IMG/VR virus record: IMGVR_UViG_3300024350_000252
Coordinates: 62,001 to 126,000 of that record
Length of the DNA: 64,000 nt
Reading direction: 5' to 3' (one strand)
A program made the position numbers and the translations under genes. This document shows positions 15,799-45,317 of this stretch, in pieces. Under the pieces are notes generated by a model that had not been told where the DNA came from, made no database searches, and saw only the letters and a program-made list of their open reading frames with translations. How positions within the stretch are numbered: position 1 is the first letter of the stretch; every line of letters starts with the position of its first letter.

Positions 15799-16197
15799 AT
15801 GTTAAAGTTTAAAACAATAGAAGATATAACTTCTACTAAAGAAGAATATGATCGATTATACAATATGGATCATATTTTTGTAATTAGAAGCAAGAAACCC
15901 GATGACAACGATTTAACTAAAGCACTGTCGATATTCGAAAGAGACAACTTTGACTGGACTTCAACCCTCAGAGGTCCGTACAAAGGTCAACCAAAAATCA
16001 CAAACGAATTAAATTATCAAGATTATGCTCACGGTTACGTGTTTGAAGTTAGTGATGATAAGTTAATTAATTTCGAAAGAAAAGCATTCATGCTTATTAT
16101 GACAACAGATTTTATCGTTGAAAAATTAGATATAGTAAGATCTAAAAAAGAAGCATCAGACGAAATGTTTTACTCCCTATTTGAGGAACAAGAATAA
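15799..16197 (+). CDS. Hypothetical protein
   Basis: GGAG RBS; TAATG-coupled to folE. Confidence 0.75.
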   Translation: MLKFKTIEDITSTKEEYDRLYNMDHIFVIRSKKPDDNDLTKALSIFERDNFDWTSTLRGPYKGQPKITNELNYQDYAHGYVFEVSDDKLINFERKAFMLIMTTDFIVEKLDIVRSKKEASDEMFYSLFEEQE

Positions 16198-17033
16198 TGA
16201 CAAAAGAATTTACACCAGATCCTGTTATTAACGCAGAACTCAATAGAGAATTTATTAAGCAAGAATACGAACCTTTAGGTAAACCTGTGTTCATCAAGAA
16301 AGAAACAGGGTTAGATGCTATGAACGGCGACGGCGGATATGAACTAGCTAAACTAAGTGATCATTTACGTTTTAAAATGAAACGTGAAAACAAAAGATTC
16401 TGGGCCGGCGATAACATTAGCGATTTCCTAAGCGACGGTGATAAAGAAAAACTTATCGACGAAGCAACTCTAGCATTTGAAAAAGTCTTAGATGTCTTGT
16501 TGATCGATCGCGAAAACGATCCCAATAGTAAAGGCACAGCTCGTCGCCTTGCTAAGATGTACTTTAACGAAATAATGGCAGGAAGATATGACCCAGCACC
16601 AGACGCAACAGCATTTCCCAATGATTCGCAGGACCGTTACGAAGGTATGCTTGTTGTTCGCAGTGAGCTTCGCAGTATGTGTAGCCATCATCATCAACCC
16701 GTTACTGGCGTTGCTTATATTGGCATTATTGCCGCCGAGAAACTTATCGGACTCAGCAAGTACACACGTATCGCACAATGGTGTGCCCGTCGAGGTACTC
16801 TCCAGGAGGAACTGGCTAATGATATTGCTCGGGAGATCGAACGTGCCACAGGCGCCAAAGACCTAGGCGTTTATATTCAAGCCACTCATGGTTGCTGTGA
16901 GAATCGTGGCATCATGGCACACTCTAGTCTAACACAGACTACTGTACTAAAGGGTGCGTTTAAAGATGATCCGGGTACAAAGAAAGAGTTTATGGACAAT
17001 ATTAAACTTCAACAAGAGTTCGCTCCACGATAA
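16197..17033 (+). CDS. folE: GTP cyclohydrolase I with N-terminal extension
   Basis: TARRLAKMY, SMCSHH, IGLSKYTR, RRGTLQEEL, HGCCENRG motifs. Confidence 0.96.
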   Translation: MTKEFTPDPVINAELNREFIKQEYEPLGKPVFIKKETGLDAMNGDGGYELAKLSDHLRFKMKRENKRFWAGDNISDFLSDGDKEKLIDEATLAFEKVLDVLLIDRENDPNSKGTARRLAKMYFNEIMAGRYDPAPDATAFPNDSQDRYEGMLVVRSELRSMCSHHHQPVTGVAYIGIIAAEKLIGLSKYTRIAQWCARRGTLQEELANDIAREIERATGAKDLGVYIQATHGCCENRGIMAHSSLTQTTVLKGAFKDDPGTKKEFMDNIKLQQEFAPR

Positions 17034-20575: not shown

Positions 20576-21424
20576 ATGAGCAAAATCAAGATAGCAGAAC
20601 TATTTTATTCAATTCAAGGCGAAGGACGCTATATGGGTGTACCTTCGGTCTTCTTGCGTACTTTTGGTTGTAACTTTAAGTGCGCAGGCTTTGGTATGCC
20701 TAAAGGAGAACTCAGCAATGAAGCAGATAATATTGACCCATCTCTTTACACCGAGTACAAATCGCTTCCTTTGGTGTCTACAGGTTGTGATAGTTACGCT
20801 AGTTGGGATCCTCGCTTTAAGCATCTTTCTCCCGTTTTGGATACTGATGCGATTGCCGATGCTATTGTGGATACGTTACCTTACAAAGAATGGCGCGACG
20901 AACATCTCGTGATTACAGGCGGTGAGCCGTTGCTAGGTTGGCAACGTGCTTACCCAGACTTGCTACGTCATCCTAAGATGGCAGGTCTCAAGGAAATCAC
21001 TTTTGAAACAAATGGCACTCAGCCGCTAACTGAAGAATTCGCAGAGTATTTGTTAGAATGGTTGATGCCTCATCCAGAATATCACAAAGAAATCACATTC
21101 AGTGTCAGTGCTAAACTAAGTTGCTCTGGTGAAGCAAGACATGAAGCTATTCGGCCAGATGTAGTTTGTAACTACGAAACTCTAGGATATACATATCTTA
21201 AATTTGTTGTGGCTACAGAAGAAGACGCAGAAGAAGCTATCGAAACAGTAGACCTTTACAGAGCAGAAGGATTTACAGGACCGGTGTATTTGATGCCTGT
21301 AGGCGGTGTAGAAAGTGTTTATACATTGAATAATCGCCGTGTAGCAGAGCTAGCAATGAAGAACGGTTTACGTTATAGCGACAGATTACAAGTGCCGTTA
21401 TTTAAAAATGAATGGGGTACATAA
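20576..21424 (+). CDS. queE: 7-carboxy-7-deazaguanine synthase (radical SAM)
   Basis: ELFYSIQGEG..GVPSVFLRTFGCNFKC...CDS, VITGGEP, ETNGT, SVSAKL, RLQV motifs. Confidence 0.92.
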   Translation: MSKIKIAELFYSIQGEGRYMGVPSVFLRTFGCNFKCAGFGMPKGELSNEADNIDPSLYTEYKSLPLVSTGCDSYASWDPRFKHLSPVLDTDAIADAIVDTLPYKEWRDEHLVITGGEPLLGWQRAYPDLLRHPKMAGLKEITFETNGTQPLTEEFAEYLLEWLMPHPEYHKEITFSVSAKLSCSGEARHEAIRPDVVCNYETLGYTYLKFVVATEEDAEEAIETVDLYRAEGFTGPVYLMPVGGVESVYTLNNRRVAELAMKNGLRYSDRLQVPLFKNEWGT

Positions 21425-25719: not shown

Positions 25720-26384
25720 ATGTTAAACTGGTTTCCTATTCTCAACCAACAGCAGAGTTTGCGAACATGGGCATCTCGGATGCGCAGGAACTCATTGCGT
25801 ACTGCGCCCGTGTGTCCAACCCAAGCAATCAATTTAACACCGAGACATCAGAAAAACTCATCAGATACTTGGTCAAACACGCACACTGGAGCCCACTCGA
25901 AATGGTCTCAGCCTGCGTTGAAATCACAACCACCCGGGACATTGCCAGACAGATCTTGCGACACAGAAGTTTCAGTTTCCAAGAATTCAGTCAACGCTAT
26001 GCTGACCCAACTAAAGATCTTAAATTCGTTACAAGAGAAGCTAGACTCCAAGACGACAAAAACAGACAGAATAGTATCGAAGCAGATGATCCAGAGTTAC
26101 AAGCATGGTGGGATGCCAAACAAAAATGGGTCATTGAACAAGCTCGCATAGCCTACGAAGAAGCTATCAATAAGGGCATGGCAAAAGAACAGGCTAGAGC
26201 AGTATTGCCAGAAGGTCTGATTGAAAGTAGGCTATATATGAATGGAACCTTGCGCAGTTGGGTACATTTTATAGAATTGCGTTCAGGTAACGGAACTCAA
26301 AAAGAACATAGAGAAATAGCCAAAATGTGTGCTCAGGTTATTGCTCAAGTGTTTCCAATGAGTGTACAATATATACAAGATTAA
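25716..26384 (+). CDS. thyX: FAD-dependent thymidylate synthase
   Basis: HWSPLE, QILRHRSFSFQEFSQRY (RHR-x7-S), EQARAVLP, LRSWVHF. Confidence 0.96.
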   Translation: MNVKLVSYSQPTAEFANMGISDAQELIAYCARVSNPSNQFNTETSEKLIRYLVKHAHWSPLEMVSACVEITTTRDIARQILRHRSFSFQEFSQRYADPTKDLKFVTREARLQDDKNRQNSIEADDPELQAWWDAKQKWVIEQARIAYEEAINKGMAKEQARAVLPEGLIESRLYMNGTLRSWVHFIELRSGNGTQKEHREIAKMCAQVIAQVFPMSVQYIQD

Positions 26385-26403
26385 CTTTAAGGAGAATATC
26401 TCT

Positions 26404-27081
26404 ATGTTAGCAACAGGTACATATAGAAGTGCGGATGCCATTAACTCTGCTATGTTGAGAGTCTACAATCACATGCTCAGTGCTGTTGTGATTTCTGGAC
26501 TGACTGCCGCAGGTGTTGCCAGTTCACCCGCATTATTGTCTTTCTTTTTTACAGGCCCAATGATGTGGGTTACACTATTCCTGCCGTTGGTTTGTATCTT
26601 AGGATTTGCCTTTGCTCAAGAAAATTTGAGCAAGACAGGACTACAACTATTCCTAATGGCATTTGCTGCTCTTATGGGGCTTAGCCTTAGTGCTATGTTT
26701 GCTGTGTTCACTTTAGGTTCAGTAGTCAGCGCATTTTTAGGATCGGCGGTTCTGTTTGGTACCATGAGCTTTTATGGTTACTTTACTAAACGCAGTTTAG
26801 AAAGTTTAGGCCAGTTTATGTTTATTGGTTTGATCGCTATCGTTATCGCAAGCATTGTCAATATCTTTATCGGTTCATCAGTAATGACCATGGTGATTTC
26901 AGCATTGGCAATCATTATATTCTTAGGTTTAACAGCCTATGACACACAACAAATTCGTGAAATGGTAACTATTGATTCCGACACCGGACGAGAAGAAGTA
27001 TTAGGTGCGTTGACACTATACATGGACTTTATCAATCTGTTTATCAATCTATTACAGATTATTGGTGTTAAACGGGATTAA
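26404..27081 (+). CDS. Bax inhibitor-1 / YccA family membrane protein
   Basis: Seven hydrophobic segments, TAYDTQ and ALTLYMDFINLF motifs; AAGGAG RBS places start at 26404. Confidence 0.9.
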   Translation: MLATGTYRSADAINSAMLRVYNHMLSAVVISGLTAAGVASSPALLSFFFTGPMMWVTLFLPLVCILGFAFAQENLSKTGLQLFLMAFAALMGLSLSAMFAVFTLGSVVSAFLGSAVLFGTMSFYGYFTKRSLESLGQFMFIGLIAIVIASIVNIFIGSSVMTMVISALAIIIFLGLTAYDTQQIREMVTIDSDTGREEVLGALTLYMDFINLFINLLQIIGVKRD

Positions 27082-28495
27082 GTTTTTTACAGTAAAAATA
27101 AAATTCTGCCAATTCGGGGAACGTTTCTAAAAAATTCGTTCCCCGTCTCTTATCATGTTCATCGACAAAGGCTACAAAATCTTTTCTATTTCTATCCTGT
27201 AGTCCATCCATTCTGCTACTGAATATAGAATATAGACGTTCTAGTTTCTGTATCTCGCTTTTATAAAATCCGACAGAATTGTCACCTTTAGAAACAGTAT
27301 TAGCTTTCATAAAAGCAATTTGTTCTTTGATCATAGACATGATATCTTTGGTCAAGATACCTACTGTTTGATGAGGAGGATTATTCAAATATGGTATGTC
27401 TAGATTAACAGGATGGGTGCCTATATCAATATTAAAGACTTTGTTTAGTACTCTTTCGTACCATTTTGGTTTTCCATATTTTTCATTAAGATAAAGGATA
27501 TCTTTTAGAAACTCTGTATAACTAGTAACAGACAGAGCATTATAAGTGCTCATTATTCCTATCTTGGCTCTGGGAACTTCTGTTAGATACTTTTCACAAT
27601 TAGACAACCACTTGGCGTAATCTAATCCGAAACGAATATACTCTGCTTGTTTGCCATGTGCTTCACAGCTAGTATAAACAAGAATAGATTTTACAGATTT
27701 TGATATCTGTATCTTTTTAAGTTTTTCTATAAACTTATCAAACAGGTCATCAGGTACACAAAAATTCGAATTGATGTTTAATTCTAGATTCTTATTAGGA
27801 TTTTCCAGTATATGATCTAACACTCTGAAAGTATGCTTGCTAAGGAGAGGTTCGCCTCCAGTGATACGGAATGTGTGTAGAGTTGGGTATAATTCAGGCC
27901 ACCATTGCCAAAATGCTTCAACATATGGATTATATTCTCTTTCAGGATGTGGCATCTTGTTCTGTATCTGTACCCATTCTAGATTATTAAATCTCATAGA
28001 AGTAGGATACGGACCAAACTCTTTTATCTCTTCCATCCACTTGCTGCTAACATCCGGAGAGCAATACGAACACTTAAAATTACAAACATTTGAAAAAGAA
28101 ATTTCTAGATAACTAGGATTTACGTTACCATCTGATCCGGCTGCTAGATATTCTTTCAATCTATCTTTAGACCAGGGTTCGTAACTTTTTAATATCCTAT
28201 CGCTGAGTGTATGACCACTGTCCTCAGCTTTCCAACAATAATCACATTCGCTAGGGCGAGATCCATCTAGCATCTGTTTACGCAACAGTTTTTTGTATCC
28301 TGTATTATGTAATGCGCTGGGGTTTTCTTTTATTTCTTCTATAGGGATGACATGAGTTCTAGGGTGATGGCAACTGTGCGTATGCCCTACACCAAGATGT
28401 ATAGTTACCTGGCTCCATTTGGCCGTACAGAAGCTAGGACTAATCTTGTCCATTTCTTTCTTATATTCTAGACGTTCTTTAGTCCAACTGTTCAT
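27068..28495 (-). CDS. Radical SAM protein with N-terminal Cys-rich (twitch-like) domain
   Basis: CNFKCSYC (CX3CX2C), ITGGEPLL; N-terminal FC...SCHH...CDYC. Confidence 0.88.
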   Translation of the reverse strand: MNSWTKERLEYKKEMDKISPSFCTAKWSQVTIHLGVGHTHSCHHPRTHVIPIEEIKENPSALHNTGYKKLLRKQMLDGSRPSECDYCWKAEDSGHTLSDRILKSYEPWSKDRLKEYLAAGSDGNVNPSYLEISFSNVCNFKCSYCSPDVSSKWMEEIKEFGPYPTSMRFNNLEWVQIQNKMPHPEREYNPYVEAFWQWWPELYPTLHTFRITGGEPLLSKHTFRVLDHILENPNKNLELNINSNFCVPDDLFDKFIEKLKKIQISKSVKSILVYTSCEAHGKQAEYIRFGLDYAKWLSNCEKYLTEVPRAKIGIMSTYNALSVTSYTEFLKDILYLNEKYGKPKWYERVLNKVFNIDIGTHPVNLDIPYLNNPPHQTVGILTKDIMSMIKEQIAFMKANTVSKGDNSVGFYKSEIQKLERLYSIFSSRMDGLQDRNRKDFVAFVDEHDKRRGTNFLETFPELAEFYFYCKKLNPV

Positions 28496-29153
28496 ATTGA
28501 TTTTTTAACCACACAAAATCATTTATTTTTTTAAGTGCTTCTTGATTGTCTTTGTTTTCTCGACCAAACTGTTCGCCTGCTCTAGCACCTTTAAGAGATT
28601 CATAAGCAAAAGGAGAATCGTTAGATTCAGTACACCAAATTTTTAATCGTGCTTCGTCTGTTTTTATATTTCTATTCTTGATAGTGCCCGATGCTAATTT
28701 GACACACTCCCTAAATGCTGTTCTCCAAGCATGGAATGCTGTGCTGTTATAAGCATGATAATTCAACACATGTTCTACTATCTTTATTCGGCCATAAAAA
28801 CTGGTACTGAAATCTATGCGTTCTTGATCATCGAACAGAGTTTTATCAAATATTTTTATTCCGCCGTGACCGTATTCCAACCCATTTATAGGATTTCTTG
28901 CTCTAAAAATATAGATGTATCCTCTTTCTTGTGTTTTCTTGTAGACATCAAAAAGATTAAAATCATCCAAGAGAACAGCATCTCCATCTATAAGCATAAA
29001 TTGATTAGTGTCAGAGATATTAGCACAGTGCTTATGAGACTGTGCTATAGACATTTTGGTGTCTATTTTTTTAAGATCTTTTATCTTTTCTTTTGCCAGC
29101 TGAAAGTTTTTTTCTGCGTTTGGCTCATCATATGCTAGGAAAAATTTTTCCAT
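28479..29153 (-). CDS. GT-A-like putative glycosyltransferase
   Basis: YDEPNAE, SH..C, IDGD (DxD), YGHGGIK, AWRTAFRE; paralog of next gene. Confidence 0.65.
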   Translation of the reverse strand: MEKFFLAYDEPNAEKNFQLAKEKIKDLKKIDTKMSIAQSHKHCANISDTNQFMLIDGDAVLLDDFNLFDVYKKTQERGYIYIFRARNPINGLEYGHGGIKIFDKTLFDDQERIDFSTSFYGRIKIVEHVLNYHAYNSTAFHAWRTAFRECVKLASGTIKNRNIKTDEARLKIWCTESNDSPFAYESLKGARAGEQFGRENKDNQEALKKINDFVWLKNQYEQLD

Positions 29154-30055
29154 ATTGGACTCTTATTGTAATAGGTCTGTCCTAACGAAATAGATTCAGA
29201 ATAAAGATCTAATATGTATTCGCTTTGATCTTTATCAAAATAGGCCCAGTTTAAACCTAGTTCTAATTTTATTTTTTCACCTAGTGATTTTATTTCTTCT
29301 ACAAGACCCTTGTCGTTATCATCAACATAGGGTTTCACATACTGACCATAGATTCCCTGTAATATGTCAAAGTCTCTAACTTCACGATAGTCCCAATCTG
29401 TACAATAGGCTAACCATGTACCTAATCTCGCACCATATATAGCATAAAGCCCATTATTAACGTGAGCCCCTACAGAACTCCAAATACGAAGTCTATGTAT
29501 GTTGTGCCAGTAGATTTCTTTCGTGATTAAAGACTTGTGTACTTTTACACCGTTCTTGGTCAACATCTTTACTCCTTCGCGGAAGCCGGCACGCCAGGCC
29601 TGTAAAGGAGTAGCATTTATTATAGTGTCGCTGAATACTGATGGAAAGTTCATATAACCTTTTTCCCAACAGAAATCAACTTGTGCGTTTTCTGATTCAG
29701 CAGCTTCATGCGTTTTCATCTGCTCTATGAAAGATTTTTTCCATATTTTTAAACCACCGTTGCCATAACTTAGATGATTAATATTGTTTTGACCGCACCA
29801 GCTATACACTTCTATAGCAGGTAGTTCCTCAAAGGCAATATCAAAAAAAGCTGGTCGTACTTGATTATCACCATCAACAGTTACTAACCACTCTGTGTTA
29901 GATAATTTTGCTGCTGCTTTATGAGCATTATCACTGCCTTTGACTCCGTGTACACGTTGAGCCCAGGGTGCCTTAGATAGCAGGTCAGCCCAATTTATTT
30001 CAGCATTAGGCTCATCATAGGAAATAAAAATAATATCTAGATCTGAAACTTTCAT
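29135..30055 (-). CDS. GT-A-like putative glycosyltransferase
   Basis: ISYDEPNAE, HGVKG..NAH, VDGD, YGNGGLK, AWRAGFRE; start moved to second Met. Confidence 0.7.
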   Translation of the reverse strand: MKVSDLDIIFISYDEPNAEINWADLLSKAPWAQRVHGVKGSDNAHKAAAKLSNTEWLVTVDGDNQVRPAFFDIAFEELPAIEVYSWCGQNNINHLSYGNGGLKIWKKSFIEQMKTHEAAESENAQVDFCWEKGYMNFPSVFSDTIINATPLQAWRAGFREGVKMLTKNGVKVHKSLITKEIYWHNIHRLRIWSSVGAHVNNGLYAIYGARLGTWLAYCTDWDYREVRDFDILQGIYGQYVKPYVDDNDKGLVEEIKSLGEKIKLELGLNWAYFDKDQSEYILDLYSESISLGQTYYNKSPIWKNFS

Positions 30056-30636
30056 TTTATAGTGTAACAAGCTGAAATAAAAATCTTTCTATAATACAGA
30101 CTAAAATCATTGGCAAACAATTTAGTAGGATTCATGTCTGTTATCATAAATTCTTTTTCATTGTTTTCATCAAACTCATCAAAATTACAATTAAAAGTCT
30201 GATAGTGTGCGTTAATATCTCCCTTGCCGGTAAGATGTAAATCGAAACTATTCTTAGAAGGATCTGCTTTAGCAGATGGCGGTCCATTGTATTTTACGAT
30301 CATACGAGGTGAATGATCTCTAGTAAAAACAGTGACTACTAGATCAGTAGTTTGATTGTTCCTAGCTGGGGAAAACGGTAATTGAATGAATTGATTAAAA
30401 TCAGGATCATTGTCTAAAGTTTCTTCTATGCTATAGATCCTTATACTATTACCGTCAATATTAACTTTATAGTTGTGTATATTTTTAACACCTCGAGATA
30501 TTTCGTCAAACAATGGCTGGTATTCGTCAGGAACTGTGATTACCTGTAGAGTGGGATCATTGCTTTTAACAATAACAGATTTACTACCTCCTACTATATC
30601 CCCGGTAGTAGTTCTTACTACGATGTTATGTAACAT
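30052..30636 (-). CDS. Hypothetical protein
   Basis: ORF track; overlap-coupled in operon. Confidence 0.75.
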   Translation of the reverse strand: MLHNIVVRTTTGDIVGGSKSVIVKSNDPTLQVITVPDEYQPLFDEISRGVKNIHNYKVNIDGNSIRIYSIEETLDNDPDFNQFIQLPFSPARNNQTTDLVVTVFTRDHSPRMIVKYNGPPSAKADPSKNSFDLHLTGKGDINAHYQTFNCNFDEFDENNEKEFMITDMNPTKLFANDFSLYYRKIFISACYTIK

Positions 30637-31486
30637 TTTTAAAATTCTCCATCATGATGTTATGATAGTTACTTATCATATCCTGTGTGAACAGATCTTT
30701 TTGACTGTAATGTATGATATCAGTTTGATTAAAACTACCTATCTTAAATCGATTCAGCTTGTCAAAGTAATAACCAACTTCTTTGCCCATTTTTTGTACA
30801 TTGGTTTTGAACCCTTGTATCCTAGGTTTTAGATGTACAAATCGAGGAAATTCTAAATCATATGAAATAGTATCTTCTAAATCTAATATCTTTGCTGCTA
30901 AAGAAAATGCTTCATCTGTGCCTACAACTTCTGGTATATCTTTATCAAGGAAATAATTTTTAAATTCAGTTGGATAATCTATGATATATCGACCCATGTT
31001 GAAAAATTTTTCAACAATTAATGATGTCTTATCAAAAAATGTATACGCCGAATATAGGATAGGCAATTGATTTTTTTCATATGTTTGTCTATAAAAATTA
31101 TCAGTAACAATATCGTCTCTAAATGTCTTTACCTTATTAGTCACATAAATTTCTGTATTAGAATTTATAAAATAATCAATCCAATGACTAGTATCTCTGA
31201 CCATCAACATATCAGCATCAAGACAGACTGTGTATCGCCAAGGGCTTAACTGATCCATATATGATCTACCATCCCAGTGCTGTTTTTTATCCCAGAATAT
31301 AACTTGATTAAACACAGGACTAGAACTAATGACTGGTATCGTTTCCTTATCATCTGTTATTAATGCTACTTTATCGTATCCTTGTTTCTGTGTGGCTTTT
31401 ATAGATAAAGCCAACAAGTAGGCCATCGACAGATATTCATTGGTGCTAGATTTAGAAATGACTACAAGATATCCAAAATCTTTCAT
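30626..31486 (-). CDS. GT8-like putative glycosyltransferase
   Basis: Y..MAYLLALSIK, VALITD, VCLDADML (DxD), TDEAFS, late HY motif. Confidence 0.7.
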   Translation of the reverse strand: MKDFGYLVVISKSSTNEYLSMAYLLALSIKATQKQGYDKVALITDDKETIPVISSSPVFNQVIFWDKKQHWDGRSYMDQLSPWRYTVCLDADMLMVRDTSHWIDYFINSNTEIYVTNKVKTFRDDIVTDNFYRQTYEKNQLPILYSAYTFFDKTSLIVEKFFNMGRYIIDYPTEFKNYFLDKDIPEVVGTDEAFSLAAKILDLEDTISYDLEFPRFVHLKPRIQGFKTNVQKMGKEVGYYFDKLNRFKIGSFNQTDIIHYSQKDLFTQDMISNYHNIMMENFKNVT

Positions 31487-32298
31487 AGAGATAGAATCTC
31501 CTTTTCAAACTTTAGAATGTCTTGTTTTTTCATAATATGAATAGAAGAATTTTTTATCGATAGCAGAGCAGTTTTATCAAATGCGTCTACAGAAAAATGT
31601 AATCCGTGTTCGTTAACATTTATTAATGTGTCAGTTTTTGTCATCCATATGATAGACGGCAATAAATTCGCACCTTCAACAAATCCATTATAAATGTGAT
31701 TGGCTAATGTAAAAGCTATATCATTCCTAAAAATCCTAGGATTAAATTTATGTATATCACTAACAAATCGATATTCTGTTTTGATGTACTTCATTGTATC
31801 GAACACTAATTTTGCTGCCTGATTTTTTGTAAACATCATAGCAGTAGCCCATCTCAATCGCATAGCAGTATCAGATACACGTAGGTCTTCCGGGTGTAAT
31901 TTATTACCTATAAAATCTATCATACTGTCAGTGATCATAAAATCTTCATCATACTCCCAATAGTGAGAATACTGATCATCGAATATTAAAAGGTCACTAT
32001 CTATCAATAGAGTTCTATCGTATGGTGTAAGTTCAAAAGCCAACTGCCTAGAATCATTTAGGAAAAGCTCAGACTTTCCTTCATATATTCTATAATTATT
32101 TTTTTGAGGAGAATCTATTTCTATAATATTATCAAATATAGAATCATCAAAAGTAGAATTTTCTCTACTTTCTTTGTCGGTGATCAAAGATACCGGCACT
32201 GATAATTTTTTCATAGCTAATTTCGCCGATATTTCAGCTAGCTTTAGATAATCTATAGATTGATTATTGTGTCCAAATATCAATATGCCTTTGTTCAT
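31483..32298 (-). CDS. GT8-like putative glycosyltransferase
   Basis: Y..LA..SA, VSLITD, LLIDSDLL (DxD), RNDIAF, HIMKK; paralog of preceding gene. Confidence 0.7.
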   Translation of the reverse strand: MNKGILIFGHNNQSIDYLKLAEISAKLAMKKLSVPVSLITDKESRENSTFDDSIFDNIIEIDSPQKNNYRIYEGKSELFLNDSRQLAFELTPYDRTLLIDSDLLIFDDQYSHYWEYDEDFMITDSMIDFIGNKLHPEDLRVSDTAMRLRWATAMMFTKNQAAKLVFDTMKYIKTEYRFVSDIHKFNPRIFRNDIAFTLANHIYNGFVEGANLLPSIIWMTKTDTLINVNEHGLHFSVDAFDKTALLSIKNSSIHIMKKQDILKFEKEILSL

Positions 32299-32651
32299 TC
32301 TTTAGGCATCACTCTTAATATATTATTTTTTTGATTTTTTAGATCTTCATAACCTGCTTGATAAAACCCCACAGCAGACCAATATCTGTCTTTTATTAGA
32401 TTTTCAAAATCTTTAAGATCCGGTATCACTATAGGATTTCCATTTGAATCTATAAGGATAACGTCTCGAATTTTTCCTTCAATGATTAGAGACCTTACAA
32501 AAACTAAAAGATGGCTGTCTATCTTGAACAGACCTCCTTGATAGCCAAATGTAGTGTCAGCTGAAAATTTTTCAGCAAGATATTTTTTTTGAGTCTTAAT
32601 GCTCAACATCTTGTTTGAAAAATCTATAGCATTTTGTAGATTTTCGTTCAT
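32295..32651 (-). CDS. Hypothetical protein
   Basis: First gene of the GT block; overlap-coupled. Confidence 0.75.
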   Translation of the reverse strand: MNENLQNAIDFSNKMLSIKTQKKYLAEKFSADTTFGYQGGLFKIDSHLLVFVRSLIIEGKIRDVILIDSNGNPIVIPDLKDFENLIKDRYWSAVGFYQAGYEDLKNQKNNILRVMPKE

Positions 32652-32689
32652 AAAAAAACCCCTAGCTTTGTATATATGCTAAGGGTTTT
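32652..32689 (-). terminator. Hairpin plus T7 tract abutting a start codon (terminator and/or RBS-sequestering stem)
   Basis: Minus strand AAAACCCTTAGC-atatatacaaa-GCTAGGGGTTTT-TTT-ATG. Confidence 0.65.
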
Positions 32690-32708
32690 GCTGATCTGTA
32701 AGTCTTGA

Positions 32709-34055
32709 TTACGAAAATACTGAGCCACCGGATCCATTGCTGAAACTAATTTGCGAATTAGTCCAAGGTACTACGTAAGGATCTGATTGTAGTGTTATAC
32801 TGCCAACGGTGTAATATAATGTCAAATTCAATTGGAATCTAGCTGTCACGTTTGGAGAGAATTGGTTCACGTGTCCGTTGTATAGATCGATCAAAATACC
32901 AATTTTCTTTTGTGTATATGCTCTGTGTTTAATACCTATATAGTTAGTAGTATAACTGGTTGTAGTAGATGTCACTTGATTGATATAACCAAGGTTACCA
33001 TATGTAGCTGCGGTGGCATTGTATGCTCCTGCCGAAGTCCAAGGTGCGCTTGCCGGTTGCCCATACGCTCCAGTCTGGCCGTAAGGTCCTACTCCTGATG
33101 CTGTATAGCCCATGCCTGCTTTGTTATAGGCACCATAGTTAATACCTCCTGTGCCAAATAAAGACTTGGCTAAATTTTGCCAATCTTGGTTTTGAGAGGC
33201 GGCGCTTGCCGGACCATTGGTAATATTTGTTACTACTAGGTTAAGATTAAAAAATCCCCCAGTATTAAAATACTGTACGAAATCATAATTAGTCGGAAAG
33301 TCGATGATCGTTTCAACGCTCATAAGACCGTTACCCCAAGGATTGGTCGCACCATCTCTAACAGGAGCAACGTTCCAACCAAAATAAAATGCGTCTTGCA
33401 TGATAAACTTGTAAGTGTTTACATCATTTACTCTGTTGTAAAATGGAAGATAGATATCATGTAAAATAGGATCTCCACGAACAGGTTGAGGACAATGACT
33501 TGTTACACCTGTCGTAGGCCATGCGTTACCTATTTGCGGATCATTAGCTAAATCACTGCCAGTCACATGCTTCCATGCTTTATTAAGATCTATCCTTAAA
33601 TTATTGAACTGATTAGCAGAAATAACAAACTGTGATATAGCACCAGTACCGCCTGCCCATCCACTAGGATAACCATTGGATACTCTGCTATCCACATTAA
33701 CCAGCGAAAATACTGTAGGACTAATTATTTGATTGACTACAAAATAATTACCGTTCAGAGGAGTTGCTCCCCAAGATACATTGCTTATATTATCAATGTA
33801 AATTTGTTCACCTGCTACTAAGTTATGATTAGCAGTTGTAGTAATTTGGCAGGGATTGGTATTCGATATGCTAGCTATAGTTCTGTTAAATGGATATGCC
33901 AAAGATGCTAGGCTACTTAAAGGTAATCCATATCCAGTTCCTTTTATATACACATTCGGTGCGGAAGTCTGAAGAGGCCCAACCAATGTGGCTATTGTGC
34001 TATAAAGAGCATTGTAATCACTATATCTAACTGGATCATACTGGTTTGCTGGCAT
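32709..34055 (-). CDS. Virion structural protein with an FCCH-like beta domain
   Basis: ISNTNPCQITT..NHNL..GE.I.I pattern; Asn/Thr/Gly-rich; located in tail module. Confidence 0.7.
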   Translation of the reverse strand: MPANQYDPVRYSDYNALYSTIATLVGPLQTSAPNVYIKGTGYGLPLSSLASLAYPFNRTIASISNTNPCQITTTANHNLVAGEQIYIDNISNVSWGATPLNGNYFVVNQIISPTVFSLVNVDSRVSNGYPSGWAGGTGAISQFVISANQFNNLRIDLNKAWKHVTGSDLANDPQIGNAWPTTGVTSHCPQPVRGDPILHDIYLPFYNRVNDVNTYKFIMQDAFYFGWNVAPVRDGATNPWGNGLMSVETIIDFPTNYDFVQYFNTGGFFNLNLVVTNITNGPASAASQNQDWQNLAKSLFGTGGINYGAYNKAGMGYTASGVGPYGQTGAYGQPASAPWTSAGAYNATAATYGNLGYINQVTSTTTSYTTNYIGIKHRAYTQKKIGILIDLYNGHVNQFSPNVTARFQLNLTLYYTVGSITLQSDPYVVPWTNSQISFSNGSGGSVFS

Positions 34056-34065
34056 CTGTCTTACC

Positions 34066-35868
34066 TTATAAAATTATGGCTTCTACTATTTTTATTATTT
34101 CTCTATCATCCGAAGCTAATGCTATAGCGAAATTATCTAGTCTATCTGTAGCTGCTCGAGCTGTACCATCGGCAGCAGCTACTAATCTTTGACCTTTCTT
34201 GATCGGACCAACTACTTTAACTGGTACTCTTCCTTTTAATGCTACCGGCTGTCCTTCAGCTTCACTGTTCATCAGATAAGCTGGATTTTGTGAAATAACT
34301 CCTATAGCTCTATCACCGTCTTGGCAAGCAGTAACTTCGTATTCTCCTCCTACAACCATCACTGTGCCTACTTCATATTCTTTGTCAGTTTTATATATCT
34401 CAGCTAAATCGGCATAGTTAGCACTACTGGCTGTACCATTGAAAAACCTACCGTTAACATCACCGGAAGCAGTTCTTATTACTAGCGTATCACCGGTCTT
34501 GTTAACATCTGCTTGTCTGCCATTTACTGTTTGTGTATCTTTAGCTTGACCGTCAAATAATACAGCCTTGATCGCTCCCGAGGCGCTTCTTATTGGAATA
34601 GAAATAACTCCAGGATTAGCAATATCTAAAGGATCATATGTTCCTAACTTGCTAGCATTTACCGCAGATGTTGCTTGACCACTTAACGATCCTGTAAACT
34701 GTCCATAGAAATTGTCTGCTGTAAATGATCTAGTAGTGGCATTATACGCGGTAGTGCCAGCTGCGTTATTGATATTTCCGGTATGTGTGCCAGTAGTGTT
34801 GCCTGTAACATTACCTGTTAGATTACCAAAAAGAGACTGAGCATAGATATTTTTCCAATGTCTTGACGAAGCTCCAAGATTGATAGTTTCGGTATTTGCT
34901 GGGAATATCGCTTTGGCTGTAGTAATATCGTTAGTATCATACTGCTGCCTAGAGAAAATCATCATGTCATCTCTATCAGTAACTGAAGCAGCATTGCTGA
35001 TACGGAACAGTATTACACCGTTATTTTGATTTTCTATAGTTGGTTGGTTAGCTGTATTGATATAGATACGCAGATCTTTTCTTACAGTTAGATCACCAAG
35101 ACCAACAGTTAGACCTGCGCCAGAGAATGACACAGGATCGGCACCAGTGAATTGTTGTGCTGTACCTCCTGTGCTTCTAATAAAATCTTCTACTGGATGA
35201 CCACCTAGTCTTTCTGAATTACTAGCGGTACCCCAGAATCTATAACCCGAACTGTCACTAACTCCTGTATCTGATACAGAATTTAGTGTAACACCTTTCT
35301 TAATCTGCCTACCAGCTTCTGAAAAACCTGCGATACTATTAGTAGAAGATAAAGTAAAATCGGGATCATTACTAAAAACAGCAGTAGTAAGGCCGCCGAC
35401 CACAGCTTTCAATATAACATGGCTGGTATTATTAACGTCTTTAACTACCTGTGTAACAATCTGTGATGTACCAAAACCTGGTGCGCTCTGTGGTCCAATA
35501 AGCACAAAGCTAGATCCGTTCCATGCGCTCAGCTGATTTGTATTAGTATCAAACCAAAGATCTCCTTGTGAAAGCCCTGCTGGCGGACTGCTGGCTATTT
35601 CAGCACCACTTGCTGACTTAAACTTAGATCCATCATAAAACTTTAATTTCTTTGAGCTAGAATCATACCATATCTGACCGCTTACTGGCTTGCTAGGCTG
35701 TACAGTATTAGCGAAATTTTCCAATAGATATAGGAAATTTTCGTTTTGTATCTGCCCGTAGCCAGTATAATTCTTACCTACGAATTTTAAATCCGTAGAT
35801 GTATCAATAGAACCATCTTCTACATTAGTTAGAAAAGTTCCGTTATATCTATCTACTCTGTAAGTCAT
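34066..35868 (-). CDS. Tail fibre protein with C-terminal intramolecular chaperone (peptidase G2-like)
   Basis: Shared fibre N-terminus; YADLAE cleavage-type motif followed by GVIS..PAYLMN..VALKGRVPVKV. Confidence 0.8.
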   Translation of the reverse strand: MTYRVDRYNGTFLTNVEDGSIDTSTDLKFVGKNYTGYGQIQNENFLYLLENFANTVQPSKPVSGQIWYDSSSKKLKFYDGSKFKSASGAEIASSPPAGLSQGDLWFDTNTNQLSAWNGSSFVLIGPQSAPGFGTSQIVTQVVKDVNNTSHVILKAVVGGLTTAVFSNDPDFTLSSTNSIAGFSEAGRQIKKGVTLNSVSDTGVSDSSGYRFWGTASNSERLGGHPVEDFIRSTGGTAQQFTGADPVSFSGAGLTVGLGDLTVRKDLRIYINTANQPTIENQNNGVILFRISNAASVTDRDDMMIFSRQQYDTNDITTAKAIFPANTETINLGASSRHWKNIYAQSLFGNLTGNVTGNTTGTHTGNINNAAGTTAYNATTRSFTADNFYGQFTGSLSGQATSAVNASKLGTYDPLDIANPGVISIPIRSASGAIKAVLFDGQAKDTQTVNGRQADVNKTGDTLVIRTASGDVNGRFFNGTASSANYADLAEIYKTDKEYEVGTVMVVGGEYEVTACQDGDRAIGVISQNPAYLMNSEAEGQPVALKGRVPVKVVGPIKKGQRLVAAADGTARAATDRLDNFAIALASDDREIIKIVEAIIL

Positions 35869-36365: not shown

Positions 36366-36863
36366 TTATCCTACCTTCCCCCATGCTAGAACAAGGCTGT
36401 ATTTAGGCCTTTCATCTTGTTCAATTGTTGTCACTTCGTGCTCTAAGTGTATTGGCATGTCTAACAATGCGCCCGGTTCTTCTTCTACTACGAAACCGTT
36501 ACCATCTTTATCATACCATTTGAAATGAGGACGATCGCTCCTCAAAAAAACTAATTTAAATTTCCAATAACCCCCAACGCTGTCTTTATGTCTTAGCAAA
36601 TAATCACCGGGATCATATCTATTAATAGTGTAACTGGTCACAAAACGTCGATCATCTGGTATGGTTTTAAATATAGCATCTTTAAGATCGCTATCCATAT
36701 TAAAATAGAACAAACTCTTTAGCTGGCTATTTCCATATTGTGTGACAAAATTATGAGCCTCATCTTTTTCCCTTACAGAGAAACGATCTCTGTGCCTTTC
36801 AGCCAGTTCTATGATTTCGTCAACATTAGTGATATAGTTTTTAATCATATTAACCTGAGACAT
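36366..36863 (-). CDS. 2-oxoglutarate/Fe(II) oxygenase (prolyl-hydroxylase-like)
   Basis: INRYDPGDYL.RHKD (HxD), distal HEV, KYS in the RxS position. Confidence 0.8.
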   Translation of the reverse strand: MSQVNMIKNYITNVDEIIELAERHRDRFSVREKDEAHNFVTQYGNSQLKSLFYFNMDSDLKDAIFKTIPDDRRFVTSYTINRYDPGDYLLRHKDSVGGYWKFKLVFLRSDRPHFKWYDKDGNGFVVEEEPGALLDMPIHLEHEVTTIEQDERPKYSLVLAWGKVG

Positions 36864-45310: not shown

Positions 45311-45317
45311 TATTTAT
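45311..45317 (-). promoter_or_regulatory. Putative late promoter (ATAAATA)
   Basis: Only 4 nt before the 45306 ATG. Confidence 0.5.

What the first reader, a model, noticed from the sequence alone, without database searches (positions are those of the whole stretch)
27068..32651. Four glycosyltransferases plus a radical SAM enzyme appended to the tail-fibre operon: candidate virion glycosylation system
Seen: seven overlap-coupled genes directly downstream of, and co-oriented with, the fibre/baseplate genes. They comprise two GT8-like paralogs (IDSD, LDAD), two paralogs of a second GT-A-like type (VDGD, IDGD; shared YDEPNAE, YGxGGxK and AWRxxFRE), two hypotheticals, and a radical SAM enzyme with an extra Cys-rich domain. 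None has a predicted TM segment or signal peptide. Known: protein glycosylation is established in giant eukaryotic viruses and in some mycobacteriophages, where GT genes sit beside structural genes. Inference: a dedicated pathway builds an oligosaccharide on the Ser/Thr/Asn-rich fibres or baseplate, with the radical SAM enzyme tailoring a sugar or residue. DNA modification is the main alternative, but the location in the structural block argues against it.
Basis: partly seen in the sequence, partly recalled or inferred. Interest (0 to 1): 0.75.

Follow-up and report, generated by a model that had tools for sequence, protein, structure and literature searches.

The report
Jumbo-phage glycosyltransferase and radical SAM cassette
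Next to the tail-fibre genes of an uncultured river jumbo phage sits a widely conserved cassette of four sugar-adding enzymes and a radical SAM enzyme. It most likely decorates a phage protein with sugars, but its target is unproven and it seems to be transcribed separately from the fibre genes.

Summary
Seven overlapping minus-strand genes (27068-32651) encode two GT8-like retaining GT-A enzymes, two GT2-like GT-A paralogues, a radical SAM enzyme with an N-terminal twitch domain (NF033640, 355 bits), and two small proteins. AlphaFold models (pLDDT about 90) confirm both GT folds, and the DXD motifs are invariant.

The cassette follows the fibre genes in the same order in Ralstonia phage RsoM2USA and in about 15 metagenomic jumbo-phage loci. 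Some relatives add UDP-sugar dehydrogenase and up to ten tandem radical SAM paralogues.

New evidence favours a protein acceptor. The 306-aa GT is 40-42% identical to the C-terminal domain of bacterial GT1+GT-A fusions. These sit beside double-glycine-leader peptides and, in three of four independent contexts, C39 ABC exporters, as in glycocin-like RiPP clusters.

The claim "appended to the fibre operon" is weakened. A hairpin plus U7 lies between the last fibre gene and the cassette. Four relatives have a near-consensus sigma-70 promoter at that spot. River metatranscriptome contigs break there in three of four runs.

No hydroxymethylase or DpdA was found, which argues against DNA glycosylation. 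Pelagimyophage work described similar GT8/radical SAM islands and read them as host LPS modification. The acceptor remains unproven.

The parts
32709..34055 (-). 448-aa fibre-block protein just upstream of the cassette. It is a probable divergent member of a conserved ~300-330-aa family ('X') that precedes the cassette in relatives. In RsoM2USA gp355, X is fused to a fibre N-terminal domain. It is a candidate acceptor, not part of the enzyme set.
   Evidence: the X family is conserved upstream of g118 in 8 loci and in gp355; hhalign probability 62%, E 7.6e-5 over 137 columns. No Pfam or PHROG hit.
32652..32689 (-). Hairpin with a 12-bp stem (32689-32678 pairs with 32666-32655) and an 11-nt loop, running into a U7 tract (32658-32652) that abuts the ATG of g118. 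It looks like an intrinsic terminator or processing site.
   Evidence: dG -17.5 kcal/mol, z -4.9, 0 of 200 shuffles fold as well. RNA-library contigs end at 32636 or 32646 in 3 of 4 runs.
32295..32651 (-). g118: a conserved 118-aa protein and first gene of the cassette. Its predicted fold resembles DUF4376/tail-fibre-assembly proteins. It may be a chaperone or adaptor.
   Evidence: Atlas: feature score 0.89 to DUF4376 clusters, TM 0.55-0.61. Orthologues in 9 loci and RsoM2USA gp354. No HMM match to PF14301.
31483..32298 (-). g271: a GT8-like retaining GT-A glycosyltransferase, paralogue of g286, with DXD = D-S-D.
   Evidence: 25% identical to g286 and aligned along its length. D100 and D102 are invariant among 12 orthologues. 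Syntenic in all relatives.
30626..31486 (-). g286: a GT8-like retaining GT-A glycosyltransferase, with DXD = D90-A-D92.
   Evidence: Model pLDDT 90.2, pTM 0.90. Foldseek hits LARGE1 xylosyltransferase domain, WbbM, XXYLT1, glycogenin and UGGT at E 1e-8 to 1e-7, TM 0.5-0.57. Also YfnD/YfnF, LARGE1/2, HPAT and GspA. The family has 1613 clusters.
30052..30636 (-). g194: a fast-evolving small protein at a fixed position between the two GT types. It has no confident fold. It may be a specificity subunit or a substrate; its role is unknown.
   Evidence: Atlas pLDDT 0.32, no meaningful neighbours. Most relatives carry a weakly homologous gene at this position with shared N- and C-terminal motifs; L012/L016/L018/L019 and L017 carry other small genes there.
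29135..30055 (-). g311 (306 aa from ATG 30055): a GT2-like GT-A glycosyltransferase with a C-terminal helical domain. Motifs: SYDEPNA, D66-G-D68, YGNGGLK, AWRAGFRE. Inferred to be polypeptide-directed.
   Evidence: Model pLDDT 89.5. Best PDB match is the PBCV-1 A064R GT (E 1e-5), then RmlT, TarP, WrtF and SunS. It is 40-42% identical to the GT-A domain of bacterial GT1+GT-A fusions next to double-Gly leader peptides, three of four also beside C39 exporters. 5925 clusters at 90% identity.
28479..29153 (-). g224: a short paralogue of g311 holding the GT-A core only, with an intact DGD and the shared motifs.
   Evidence: 26% identical to g311 with all family-invariant residues kept. Orthologues sit before or after the rSAM gene in relatives.
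27068..28495 (-). Radical SAM enzyme with an N-terminal twitch (auxiliary Fe-S) domain. Proposed to tailor either a sugar or an acceptor residue.
   Evidence: NF033640 at 355 bits, cut-off 170. PF04055. Invariant C23, C84, C87, C138, C142, C145 and GGE213-215. Present as 0-10 tandem paralogues in relatives.

Best explanation
The locus is a self-contained cassette of soluble cytoplasmic enzymes. I propose that it builds and tailors a short glycan on a polypeptide, most probably a phage structural protein of the adjacent fibre block.

Proposed order of events (inferred):
1. The GT2-like enzymes (g311, g224) belong to a family whose bacterial branch accompanies ribosomal leader peptides. They put the first sugar(s) on Ser, Thr or Tyr of the acceptor.
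2. The two GT8-like retaining enzymes (g271, g286) extend the glycan.
3. Donors are host nucleotide sugars plus phage-made ones. This genome has an HldE-like kinase/nucleotidyltransferase and an epimerase elsewhere, and relatives carry UDP-sugar dehydrogenase inside the cassette.
4. The twitch-domain radical SAM enzyme modifies a sugar or the acceptor residue.
5. g118 and the fast-evolving g194 act as adaptor or specificity factors.

The cassette appears to be its own transcription unit placed after the fibre genes, not a continuation of their operon.

Shown: the gene set, the folds, the catalytic motifs, the synteny, the homology to the bacterial fusion enzymes, the hairpin, and the RNA contig breaks.

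Inferred: polypeptide acceptor, fibre or virion target, order of reactions, donors, timing.
For: - GT-A folds with invariant DXD.
- No TM segments.
- The order X-g118-g271-g286-small gene-g311-(g224, rSAM) is kept after the fibre genes in RsoM2USA and about 15 metagenomic loci at only 25-67% identity.
- g311 is 40-42% identical to the C-terminal domain of bacterial GT1+GT-A fusions. Four independent contexts carry a 59-87-aa double-glycine-leader ORF, and three also carry a C39 ABC exporter.
- Structural neighbours are protein-directed GTs: A064R, SunS/ThuS and the Che8 GT for g311; LARGE, XXYLT1, glycogenin, HPAT and UGGT for g286.
- Nucleotide-sugar genes lie in the cassette of relatives (L011, L003) and elsewhere in this genome.
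- In Bacteroidota chromosomes, N_Twi_rSAM genes sit with a methyltransferase-GT2 fusion and a GT-C in one cluster, and with PhyH-type oxygenases in another.
- The region is present at over 99% identity in river RNA libraries.
- No hydroxymethylase or DpdA in the record.
Against: - There is no direct evidence of glycans on any virion protein.
- The only proteomics on a cultured carrier (RsoM2USA) examined the ten most abundant gel bands and used no glycan stain (PMC8504454).
- A terminator-like hairpin, sigma-70-type promoters in four relatives, and flipping RNA depth ratios show separate, possibly earlier, expression.
- GT8 enzymes also build LPS cores, and pelagimyophage authors read similar islands as host O-chain modification (PMC7029224).
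- The polypeptide-acceptor inference rests on uncharacterised bacterial clusters.
- No acceptor motif is conserved: the PYG idea failed.
- The record is only about 67% complete, so absence of DNA-modification genes is provisional.
Confidence: 0.45

Rival explanations
1. Host envelope remodelling. The GTs act at the inner face of the membrane on lipid A-core, undecaprenyl-linked O-antigen or capsule intermediates of the infected cell. This changes the receptor landscape to block superinfection or to stop progeny sticking to debris. The cassette sits beside fibre genes only because both belong to a host-range hypervariable region.
For: - GT8 is the main LPS-core GT family, and such enzymes lack TM segments.
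- The genome carries an HldE-like ADP-heptose enzyme and an epimerase. Relatives carry UDP-Glc dehydrogenase. These are classical LPS/capsule precursor enzymes.
- The same reading was published for GT8/rfaE/rSAM islands next to fibres in pelagimyophages (PMC7029224).
- An own promoter in relatives and RNA breaks fit expression uncoupled from the fibres.
Against: - The closest cellular relatives of g311 accompany leader peptides (three of four also C39 exporters), not LPS genes.
- LPS GT8 enzymes (WaaI/J, LgtC) are not among the listed structural matches of g286; the listed matches are mostly protein- or glycoprotein-directed enzymes.
- No flippase, polymerase or Gtr-type membrane partner is in the cassette.
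- Arrays of up to ten radical SAM paralogues have no precedent in LPS modification.
- The strict adjacency to the X/g118 genes across hosts as different as Ralstonia and uncultured aquatic bacteria is not explained.
Confidence: 0.2
2. Maturation of a non-virion phage polypeptide. The cassette is a RiPP-like pathway whose substrate is encoded in or near the cassette (for example the fast-evolving g194). Its glycosylated, radical-SAM-modified product acts inside or outside the cell, for instance against host defences or competitors.
For: - Homology of g311 to GTs of double-glycine-leader peptide clusters.
- SPASM/twitch radical SAM enzymes are typical peptide maturases.
- A rapidly diverging small ORF with no predicted fold occupies a fixed slot between the GT genes.
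- Relatives have their own promoter for the cassette.
Against: - No double-glycine-leader-like small ORF in the window, and no C39 exporter homologue in the 238-kb record or in related phage loci.
- g194 has no leader-like N-terminus, and its conserved N-terminal motif looks like a folded strand.
- Four GTs is more than known glycocin systems use.
Confidence: 0.15
3. DNA hypermodification. The GTs glycosylate a modified base in phage DNA and the radical SAM enzyme helps to make that base.
For: - Phage GTs classically glucosylate 5-hmC.
- Radical SAM enzymes occur in thymidine hypermodification pathways (background knowledge).
- FolE- and QueE-like genes lie on the convergent strand.
- Sigma-70 promoters in relatives would fit early expression.
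Against: - No ThyA-like dCMP/dUMP hydroxymethylase and no TGT/DpdA in the 238 kb held.
- ThyX is present, so thymidylate is made normally.
- The fold is GT-A, not the GT-B of T4 alpha- and beta-GT.
- Relatives of g311 are tied to peptides.
- Linkage to fibre genes rather than to replication genes is conserved.
Confidence: 0.05

Closest known systems
Mycobacteriophage virion O-glycosylation (Che8, Corndog, Myrna; Freeman et al. 2023, cited in PMC12619734)
   Same: Phage-encoded soluble GT-A enzymes lie beside structural genes and are proposed to glycosylate virion proteins. The Che8 GT is a weak structural neighbour of g311 (rank 18).
   Different: Those GTs are recognisable GT2-type enzymes inside the late operon, and their acceptors are C-terminal tails of capsid and tail-tube proteins. 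Here there are four GTs of two families unknown to Pfam, plus a radical SAM enzyme and two small proteins. They sit next to fibres, apparently as a separate transcription unit. No glycan has been shown.
Chlorovirus PBCV-1 A064R capsid-glycosylating glycosyltransferase
   Same: It is the best solved-structure match of g311 (2p73, Foldseek E 1e-5, probability 1.0). It is a virus-encoded cytoplasmic GT-A acting on a virion protein independently of host machinery.
   Different: Only 13-14% identity and TM 0.29-0.44, so the likeness is at fold level. A064R is a three-domain protein of a eukaryotic virus, and no radical SAM partner is known.
Glycocin-type RiPP systems (SunS/ThuS S-glycosyltransferases with C39 ABC exporters)
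   Same: Bacterial homologues of g311 (40-42% identity) lie next to double-glycine-leader peptides, three of four also next to C39 ABC exporters. SunS and ThuS are among the fold matches of g311.
   Different: The bacterial enzymes are GT1+GT-A fusions of an uncharacterised family, not SunS orthologues. The phage has no leader peptide and no exporter, and it adds GT8-like enzymes and a radical SAM.
Hypervariable fibre region of pelagimyophages and cyanomyophages (Zaragoza-Solas et al. 2020, PMC7029224)
   Same: The layout is the same: a giant VrlC-like protein, then fibres, then GT8-type GTs, rfaE, UDP-Glc dehydrogenase and variable radical SAM cassettes.
   Different: Those are 150-200-kb T4-like phages. 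No sequence match to the present GT families was found in any cultured phage except RsoM2USA. Those authors proposed host O-chain modification. The link to peptide-associated GTs was not made there.
Cytoplasmic O-glycosylation of serine-rich repeat adhesins in streptococci (GtfA/B, then GT8 and GT2 enzymes such as GlyD/GlyE; background knowledge, not tested here)
   Same: Several soluble GT8 and GT2 enzymes act in sequence in the cytoplasm on a fibrillar surface protein before export or assembly.
   Different: There is no homology beyond the fold. The acceptor there is a long Ser-rich repeat, which the phage fibres lack. No radical SAM enzyme is involved.

Membership tests
GT-A fold, GT2-like glycosyltransferases (g311, g224) | Rossmann-like GT-A fold | tested here: met
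   Model pLDDT 89.5. 48 PDB matches at E<=1e-3; the 50 best listed are nearly all GT-A enzymes (the exception, HddC, is a GT-A-like nucleotidyltransferase): A064R, RmlT, TarP, WrtF, SunS, BcsA. Swiss-Prot matches include IcaA, TagX and ExoM.
GT-A fold, GT2-like glycosyltransferases (g311, g224) | DXD metal/nucleotide-sugar motif | tested here: met
   D66 and D68 are invariant in 30 sequences including g224.
GT-A fold, GT2-like glycosyltransferases (g311, g224) | Sequence membership in Pfam Glycos_transf_2 (PF00535) or a related model | tested here: not met
   No Pfam, PHROG or NCBIfam hit at E<=0.1. A profile search against PDB sequences found nothing. This is a separate, undescribed family.
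CAZy GT8-like retaining glycosyltransferases (g286, g271) | GT-A fold closest to GT8 members | tested here: met
   LARGE1 xylosyltransferase domain, XXYLT1 and glycogenin at TM 0.5-0.57, E about 1e-8. GT6 and GT24 enzymes score similarly, so the placement is 'GT8-like', not GT8 proper.
CAZy GT8-like retaining glycosyltransferases (g286, g271) | DXD motif | tested here: met
   D90 and D92 are invariant. In the g271 orthologues, D100 and D102 are invariant.
CAZy GT8-like retaining glycosyltransferases (g286, g271) | Sequence match to Glyco_transf_8 (PF01501) | tested here: not met
   No Pfam hit. A profile search against PDB sequences was empty.
N_Twi_rSAM (NCBIfam NF033640) | Score above the curated cut-off over the full model | tested here: met
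   355.2 bits against a cut-off of 170, model positions 1-398.
N_Twi_rSAM (NCBIfam NF033640) | CX3CX2C radical SAM cluster, GGE SAM motif, and N-terminal Cys ligands of an auxiliary cluster | tested here: met
   C138, C142, C145, G213-G214-E215 and C23, C84, C87 are invariant in 24 phage and bacterial members. Pfam SPASM matches the N-terminus of bacterial members.
Phage virion glycosylation systems (mycobacteriophage type) | Glycan covalently attached to virion proteins | not testable with these tools
   Needs virions. RsoM2USA proteomics covered only abundant bands and used no glycan analysis.
Phage virion glycosylation systems (mycobacteriophage type) | GT genes embedded in and co-transcribed with the structural operon | tested here: inconclusive
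   The genes are adjacent and co-oriented, and the synteny is conserved. However, a hairpin plus U7 lies in the spacer, relatives have a sigma-70 promoter there, and RNA contigs break at the junction.
Glycocin-like RiPP clusters | Leader-peptide precursor and C39 peptidase ABC exporter next to the GT | tested here: not met
   Present beside bacterial homologues. Absent from the window, the 238-kb record and related phage loci.
T4-type DNA glucosylation | Hydroxymethyl-pyrimidine synthesis (ThyA-like hydroxymethylase) and GT-B transferases | tested here: not met
   PF00303 is absent from the record, which is about 67% complete. The folds are GT-A.
Tail fibre assembly proteins / DUF4376 (g118) | Sequence or structure membership | tested here: inconclusive
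   Atlas feature score 0.89 and TM 0.55-0.61 to DUF4376/Caudo_TAP clusters. No PF14301 match even at E<=10 and no Pfam hit.

The most novel reading that the evidence does not exclude
The cassette is a phage-borne, RiPP-style protein-maturation pathway. A polypeptide glycosyltransferase was recruited from bacterial leader-peptide systems. GT8-like extenders and expandable arrays of twitch-domain radical SAM enzymes were added. Together they install glycans and radical-made modifications (epimerised, cross-linked or oxidised residues or sugars) on receptor-binding fibre components. The variable radical SAM complement diversifies or hardens the virion surface against proteases, host defences or grazers. 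This would be the first radical-SAM-assisted post-translational modification of a phage virion.
Probability: 0.2. Interest if true: 0.85.

Novelty: new variant of a known kind. Interest (0 to 1): 0.62.

Why it matters
Virion glycosylation is established for chloroviruses, giant viruses and some mycobacteriophages, but not for the large aquatic myoviruses that dominate many waters. This cassette is very common: about 5900 clusters at 90% identity for one GT and at least 8000 for the radical SAM enzyme. It is strictly linked to the host-recognition genes and is built from enzyme families that no curated library knows.

If it decorates fibres, it changes how adsorption, host range, particle stability and antigenicity of these phages should be read. 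It would also give a tractable model, because the cultured Ralstonia phage RsoM2USA carries it.

The homology to GT1+GT-A fusions beside double-glycine-leader peptides also points to an undescribed family of glycosylated bacterial peptides. If the cassette remodels host LPS instead, it is a widespread superinfection-exclusion device. Either way, the tandem arrays of N-terminal-twitch radical SAM enzymes have no assigned chemistry.

Tried and rejected
- **Sequence libraries.** Pfam, PHROGs and NCBIfam gave nothing for the four GTs and the two small proteins. Profile searches against PDB sequences were empty.
- **Radical SAM-GT fusion idea.** I suspected the 715-810-aa homologues were radical SAM-GT fusions. 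BLASTP showed no similarity to the radical SAM enzyme, and their N-domain is GT1/GT28-like.
- **PYG acceptor motif.** A motif shared by bacterial core peptides and the 448-aa upstream protein is not conserved in the upstream genes of relatives.
- **Late promoter.** The T4 late promoter TATAAATA has zero matches in the window. The generic sigma-70 and terminator scan found nothing above shuffles inside the cassette.
- **165-aa ORF as 2OG oxygenase.** No Pfam or PDB support.
- **g118 against the DUF4376 HMM.** No match.
- **Complex prediction (g118 against the three GTs).** Scores were 0.74 for the complex and 0.00, 0.11 and 0.62 for the controls. By its own rule the tool returned 'no answer', so I do not use it as evidence.
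- **Near-identical DNA in cultured phages.** None found.
- **Moraphages.** I could not test whether the four core GT orthogroups of moraphages (PMC12619734) are these families.

Full report
**Setting**

The window is bases 62001-126000 of a 238-kb IMG/VR viral record that CheckV estimates to be 67% complete. The same proteins also occur on a 354,650-bp contig. The DNA polymerase is T4-like and closest (44-50% identity) to jumbo myoviruses such as Sinorhizobium phage Phosso, Agrobacterium phage Atu_ph07 and Escherichia phage 121Q.

The plus strand from 1 to about 27 kb carries replication and nucleotide-metabolism genes: DNA polymerase, a FolE-like gene, a phosphoribosyltransferase, a QueE-like gene, an exonuclease and ThyX.

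The minus strand from 64 kb down to 27 kb carries, in order:
- a gp6-like baseplate wedge;
- a 4941-aa virion protein shared with Atu_ph07, PA5oct and cyanophages;
- six fibre genes with a common N-terminal domain;
- the seven genes of the finding.

The cassette ends convergently against a Bax1-I family membrane protein gene, with a 14-nt overlap of the two 3' ends.

**Check of the observation**

All seven ORFs are present and overlap one another. One correction: the 311-aa ORF really starts at ATG 30055 (306 aa), which gives an ATGA overlap with the preceding gene. The homologues and the Atlas record agree on this start.

The quoted motifs are real and conserved.
- In the GT2-like pair, D19, E20, P21, N22, A23, D66, D68, Y102, G103, G105, G106, K108, W159, R160, F163, R164 and E165 are invariant across 30 sequences, including the 224-aa paralogue.
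- In the GT8-like pair, D90 and D92 are invariant.

None of the seven proteins has a TM-like stretch, whereas the Bax1-I control does.

Curated sequence libraries recognise only the radical SAM enzyme. It hits PF04055 and, strongly, NCBIfam NF033640 'twitch domain-containing radical SAM protein' (355 bits against a cut-off of 170). Its CX3CX2C motif, GGE motif and three N-terminal cysteines are invariant across phage and bacterial members.

**Folds**

AlphaFold2 models built on my alignments were confident: pLDDT 89.5 and 90.2.

The 306-aa protein has a GT-A core of about 170 residues plus a helical C-terminal domain.
- Its best solved match is the PBCV-1 A064R glycosyltransferase, which glycosylates the chlorovirus capsid (E 1e-5).
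- The next matches are GT2-type enzymes: RmlT, TarP, WrtF, BcsA and the glycocin S-glycosyltransferases SunS and ThuS.
- TM scores are low (0.3-0.44), so this is fold-level likeness only.
- Swiss-Prot models give IcaA, TagX and ExoM. BFVD gives two long uncultured-phage proteins that contain the domain, and the Che8 GT at rank 18.

The 286-aa protein matches retaining GT-A enzymes at TM 0.5-0.57.
- PDB matches are the LARGE1 xylosyltransferase domain, WbbM, XXYLT1, glycogenin, the UGGT catalytic domain and alpha-3-GalT.
- Swiss-Prot matches are YfnD/YfnF, LARGE1/2, hydroxyproline O-arabinosyltransferase and GspA.

'GT8-like' is therefore a fair description. Membership of GT8 by sequence was tested and not met.

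**Distribution and synteny**

The families are large and almost wholly metagenomic.
- The 306-aa GT has 5925 clusters at 90% identity, or 1520 clusters at 50% identity in the exhaustive profile search.
- The 286-aa GT has 1613 clusters.
- The radical SAM enzyme has at least 8000.

Among 50,697 cultured-phage records, only Ralstonia jumbo phage RsoM2USA carries them. There, gp354-gp348 follow the baseplate, giant-protein and fibre genes in the same order.

In GTDB genomes the 21 loci are all in MAGs of unrelated phyla from marine and fresh water. They are therefore most probably mis-binned phage contigs.

Mapping the window's proteins on RsoM2USA, the related contigs L003/L004 and those 21 loci shows a constant order: fibres, g118, g271, g286, a variable small gene, g311, then g224 and radical SAM genes in varying order and number.

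The gene just before g118 is itself a conserved family of about 300-330 aa ('X'). In RsoM2USA gp355 it is fused to a fibre N-terminal domain. The window's 448-aa protein joins this family weakly (hhalign probability 62%, E 7.6e-5).

Relatives extend the cassette with:
- UDP-glucose/GDP-mannose dehydrogenase (L011, L003);
- other radical SAM types;
- a weak sulfotransferase-like protein;
- tandem arrays of six to ten N_Twi_rSAM paralogues.

This genome carries an HldE-like PfkB+cytidylyltransferase fusion and an NAD-dependent epimerase beside the gp15 and sheath genes, outside the window.

**What kind of acceptor**

The most informative result came from the exhaustive profile search. A recurrent class of 715-810-aa bacterial proteins carries the g311-type domain at the C-terminus. 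The domain is 40-42% identical to g311, with every motif kept. It sits behind a GT1/GT28-like N-domain.

I inspected six loci, five distinct contexts of which four are independent: L037/L038, L039, L040, L041 and L042.
- Each has a 59-87-aa ORF next to the fusion, with a classical double-glycine leader and a Gly/Ser/Thr/Tyr/Pro-rich core.
- L037/L038, L039 and L042 also have a C39-peptidase ABC exporter next door, and L037/L038 an HlyD-type partner as well.

This is the layout of glycocin-like RiPP clusters. The cellular branch of this GT family therefore very probably glycosylates ribosomal polypeptides. That is inference by association, because these clusters are uncharacterised.

The phage has no such leader peptide or exporter. 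The domain must therefore work on another acceptor in the phage.

N_Twi_rSAM genes are rare in Bacteroidota chromosomes: four of 401 genomes sampled have a match above the family cut-off. Where present, one cluster has four paralogues with a methyltransferase-GT2 fusion and a GT-C enzyme. Another has two paralogues with five PhyH-type oxygenases, a WelO5-like enzyme and a methyltransferase. Both are tailoring clusters rather than core metabolism.

**The small proteins**

g118 is conserved. Its Atlas model resembles DUF4376/tail-fibre-assembly proteins (feature score 0.89, TM 0.55-0.61), but no HMM match exists. This is a lead only.

g194 has no confident fold. It evolves fast but keeps N- and C-terminal motifs across most loci. 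Four loci (L012, L016, L018, L019) and L017 carry other small genes at that position.

**Transcription**

The cassette is not overlap-coupled to the fibre genes. The 57-nt spacer holds a 12-bp hairpin that runs into U7 directly before the g118 ATG (dG -17.5 kcal/mol, z -4.9).

In four independent relatives (L008, L009, L014, L017) the same spacer holds the only plus-strand near-consensus sigma-70 promoter of the whole 12-17-kb locus. L008 and L017 have a perfect TTGACA-N17-TATAAT. In this genome such sites cluster in the early plus-strand block and are absent from the structural block.

Nineteen river metatranscriptome runs hold the region. I laid the contigs of four of them on 28400-34390.
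- All matched at 95-100% identity.
- In three runs the contigs end at 32636 or 32646, inside or next to the spacer. One of these ends in adapter sequence.
- Cassette depth relative to fibre depth flips between samples: about 0.4-fold in X1 and more than 2-fold in X2.

These are assembled contigs without strand information, and DNA carry-over cannot be excluded. I therefore read this only as consistent with a transcript boundary and separate regulation. The conserved N-terminus of g118 shows that the ATG at 32651 is the real start, so 32646 is not a functional transcription start for it.

**Weighing the explanations**

DNA glycosylation is unlikely.
- No ThyA-like hydroxymethylase and no TGT/DpdA are found in the record.
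- ThyX is present.
- The folds are GT-A.
- Linkage is to fibres, not to replication genes.

Host LPS or capsule remodelling remains a serious rival. It is the published reading of very similar islands in pelagimyophages: a VrlC-like giant protein, fibres, GT8 enzymes, rfaE, UDP-Glc dehydrogenase and radical SAM cassettes (PMC7029224). It also fits the nucleotide-sugar genes and the separate promoter. It does not explain the peptide-associated relatives of g311, the protein-directed character of the nearest structural analogues, the radical SAM arrays, or the absence of any membrane partner.

A RiPP-like pathway acting on a non-virion phage polypeptide is possible but lacks a leader peptide and an exporter.

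I therefore favour protein glycosylation of a phage polypeptide, most probably a fibre-block protein such as X, at a confidence of about 0.45. The virion target is unproven.

**Novelty**

Fibre-adjacent GT and radical SAM islands in aquatic myophages are already described (PMC7029224). Four core GT orthogroups were noted in 'moraphages', with virion glycosylation mentioned as one option (PMC12619734). Virion glycosylation itself is known in other viruses.

To my knowledge from the literature searched, the following are new here:
- the definition of this conserved cassette and its two Pfam-less GT families;
- its presence in a cultured phage, RsoM2USA;
- the homology of one GT to leader-peptide-associated bacterial fusion enzymes;
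- the N-terminal-twitch radical SAM arrays;
- the evidence that the cassette is a separate transcription unit.

I rate it a new variant of a known kind, with interest 0.62.

Noticed in passing
window 26362-27081 (+): A Bax1-I/YccA-family multi-pass membrane protein (PF01027, E 5e-53) is encoded by the phage. Its 3' end overlaps the 3' end of the convergent radical SAM gene by 14 nt, so the two convergent units have no intergenic terminator.
   Followed up: partly
window 16197-17033, 20576-21424 (+): FolE-like and QueE-like 7-deazaguanine pathway genes lie in the replication block. No TGT/DpdA transglycosylase is found in the 238-kb record, so DNA versus tRNA use is open.
   Followed up: partly
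whole window: The T4 late-promoter octamer TATAAATA occurs 0 times in 64 kb on both strands, against 8.7 expected from shuffles. The late-promoter motif of this phage group is evidently different.
   Followed up: no
window 45317-60142 (-): A single 4941-aa ORF lies between the gp6-like wedge and the fibres. Its first 1500 residues match virion structural proteins of Atu_ph07, Phosso, PA5oct, SCTP-2 and some cyanophages at about 28-30% identity.
   Followed up: partly
window 36366-36863 (-): A 165-aa ORF inside the fibre array shows an H-x-D ... H pattern by eye, as in 2OG-Fe(II) oxygenases, but has no Pfam, PHROG or PDB-sequence support. A relative (L017:7238-8008) carries a different 2OG-oxygenase-looking gene inside the GT cassette.
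   Followed up: partly
own genome G000:C1:196051-198570 (outside the window; L036:6552-9071): A PfkB kinase + cytidylyltransferase fusion (HldE/RfaE-like, ADP-heptose pathway) and an NAD-dependent epimerase/dehydratase lie next to the gp15 tail-sheath-stabiliser and sheath genes. This is a phage-encoded nucleotide-sugar supply.
   Followed up: partly
G002:C3:17469-25947; G004:C2:22472-32999; G001:C1:104540-113620; G001:C3:16983-26137: Related phage contigs (binned into MAGs) carry tandem arrays of six to ten N_Twi_rSAM paralogues directly after the GT genes. The window has one. No chemistry is assigned to this family.
   Followed up: partly
L037:7677-13610, L039:1411-6040, L042:4876-11261, L041:581-3463, L040:1-2566: Bacterial GT1+GT-A fusion enzymes lie next to double-glycine-leader peptides with Gly/Ser/Thr/Tyr/Pro-rich cores, and in three of four independent contexts next to C39 ABC exporters. 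This looks like an undescribed family of glycosylated RiPPs.
   Followed up: partly
window 34066-35868 (-): The 600-aa fibre has a C-terminal stretch matching the Peptidase_G2 IMC autoproteolytic cleavage domain (E 8e-5, below the Pfam cut-off) and PHROG tail-fibre families. This suggests a self-cleaving intramolecular chaperone.
   Followed up: no
L002:10950-11633 (RsoM2USA gp347): The gene after the cassette in RsoM2USA shows by eye a class I SAM-methyltransferase-like GxGxG and acidic motif, but Pfam finds nothing. The window has no counterpart.
   Followed up: partly
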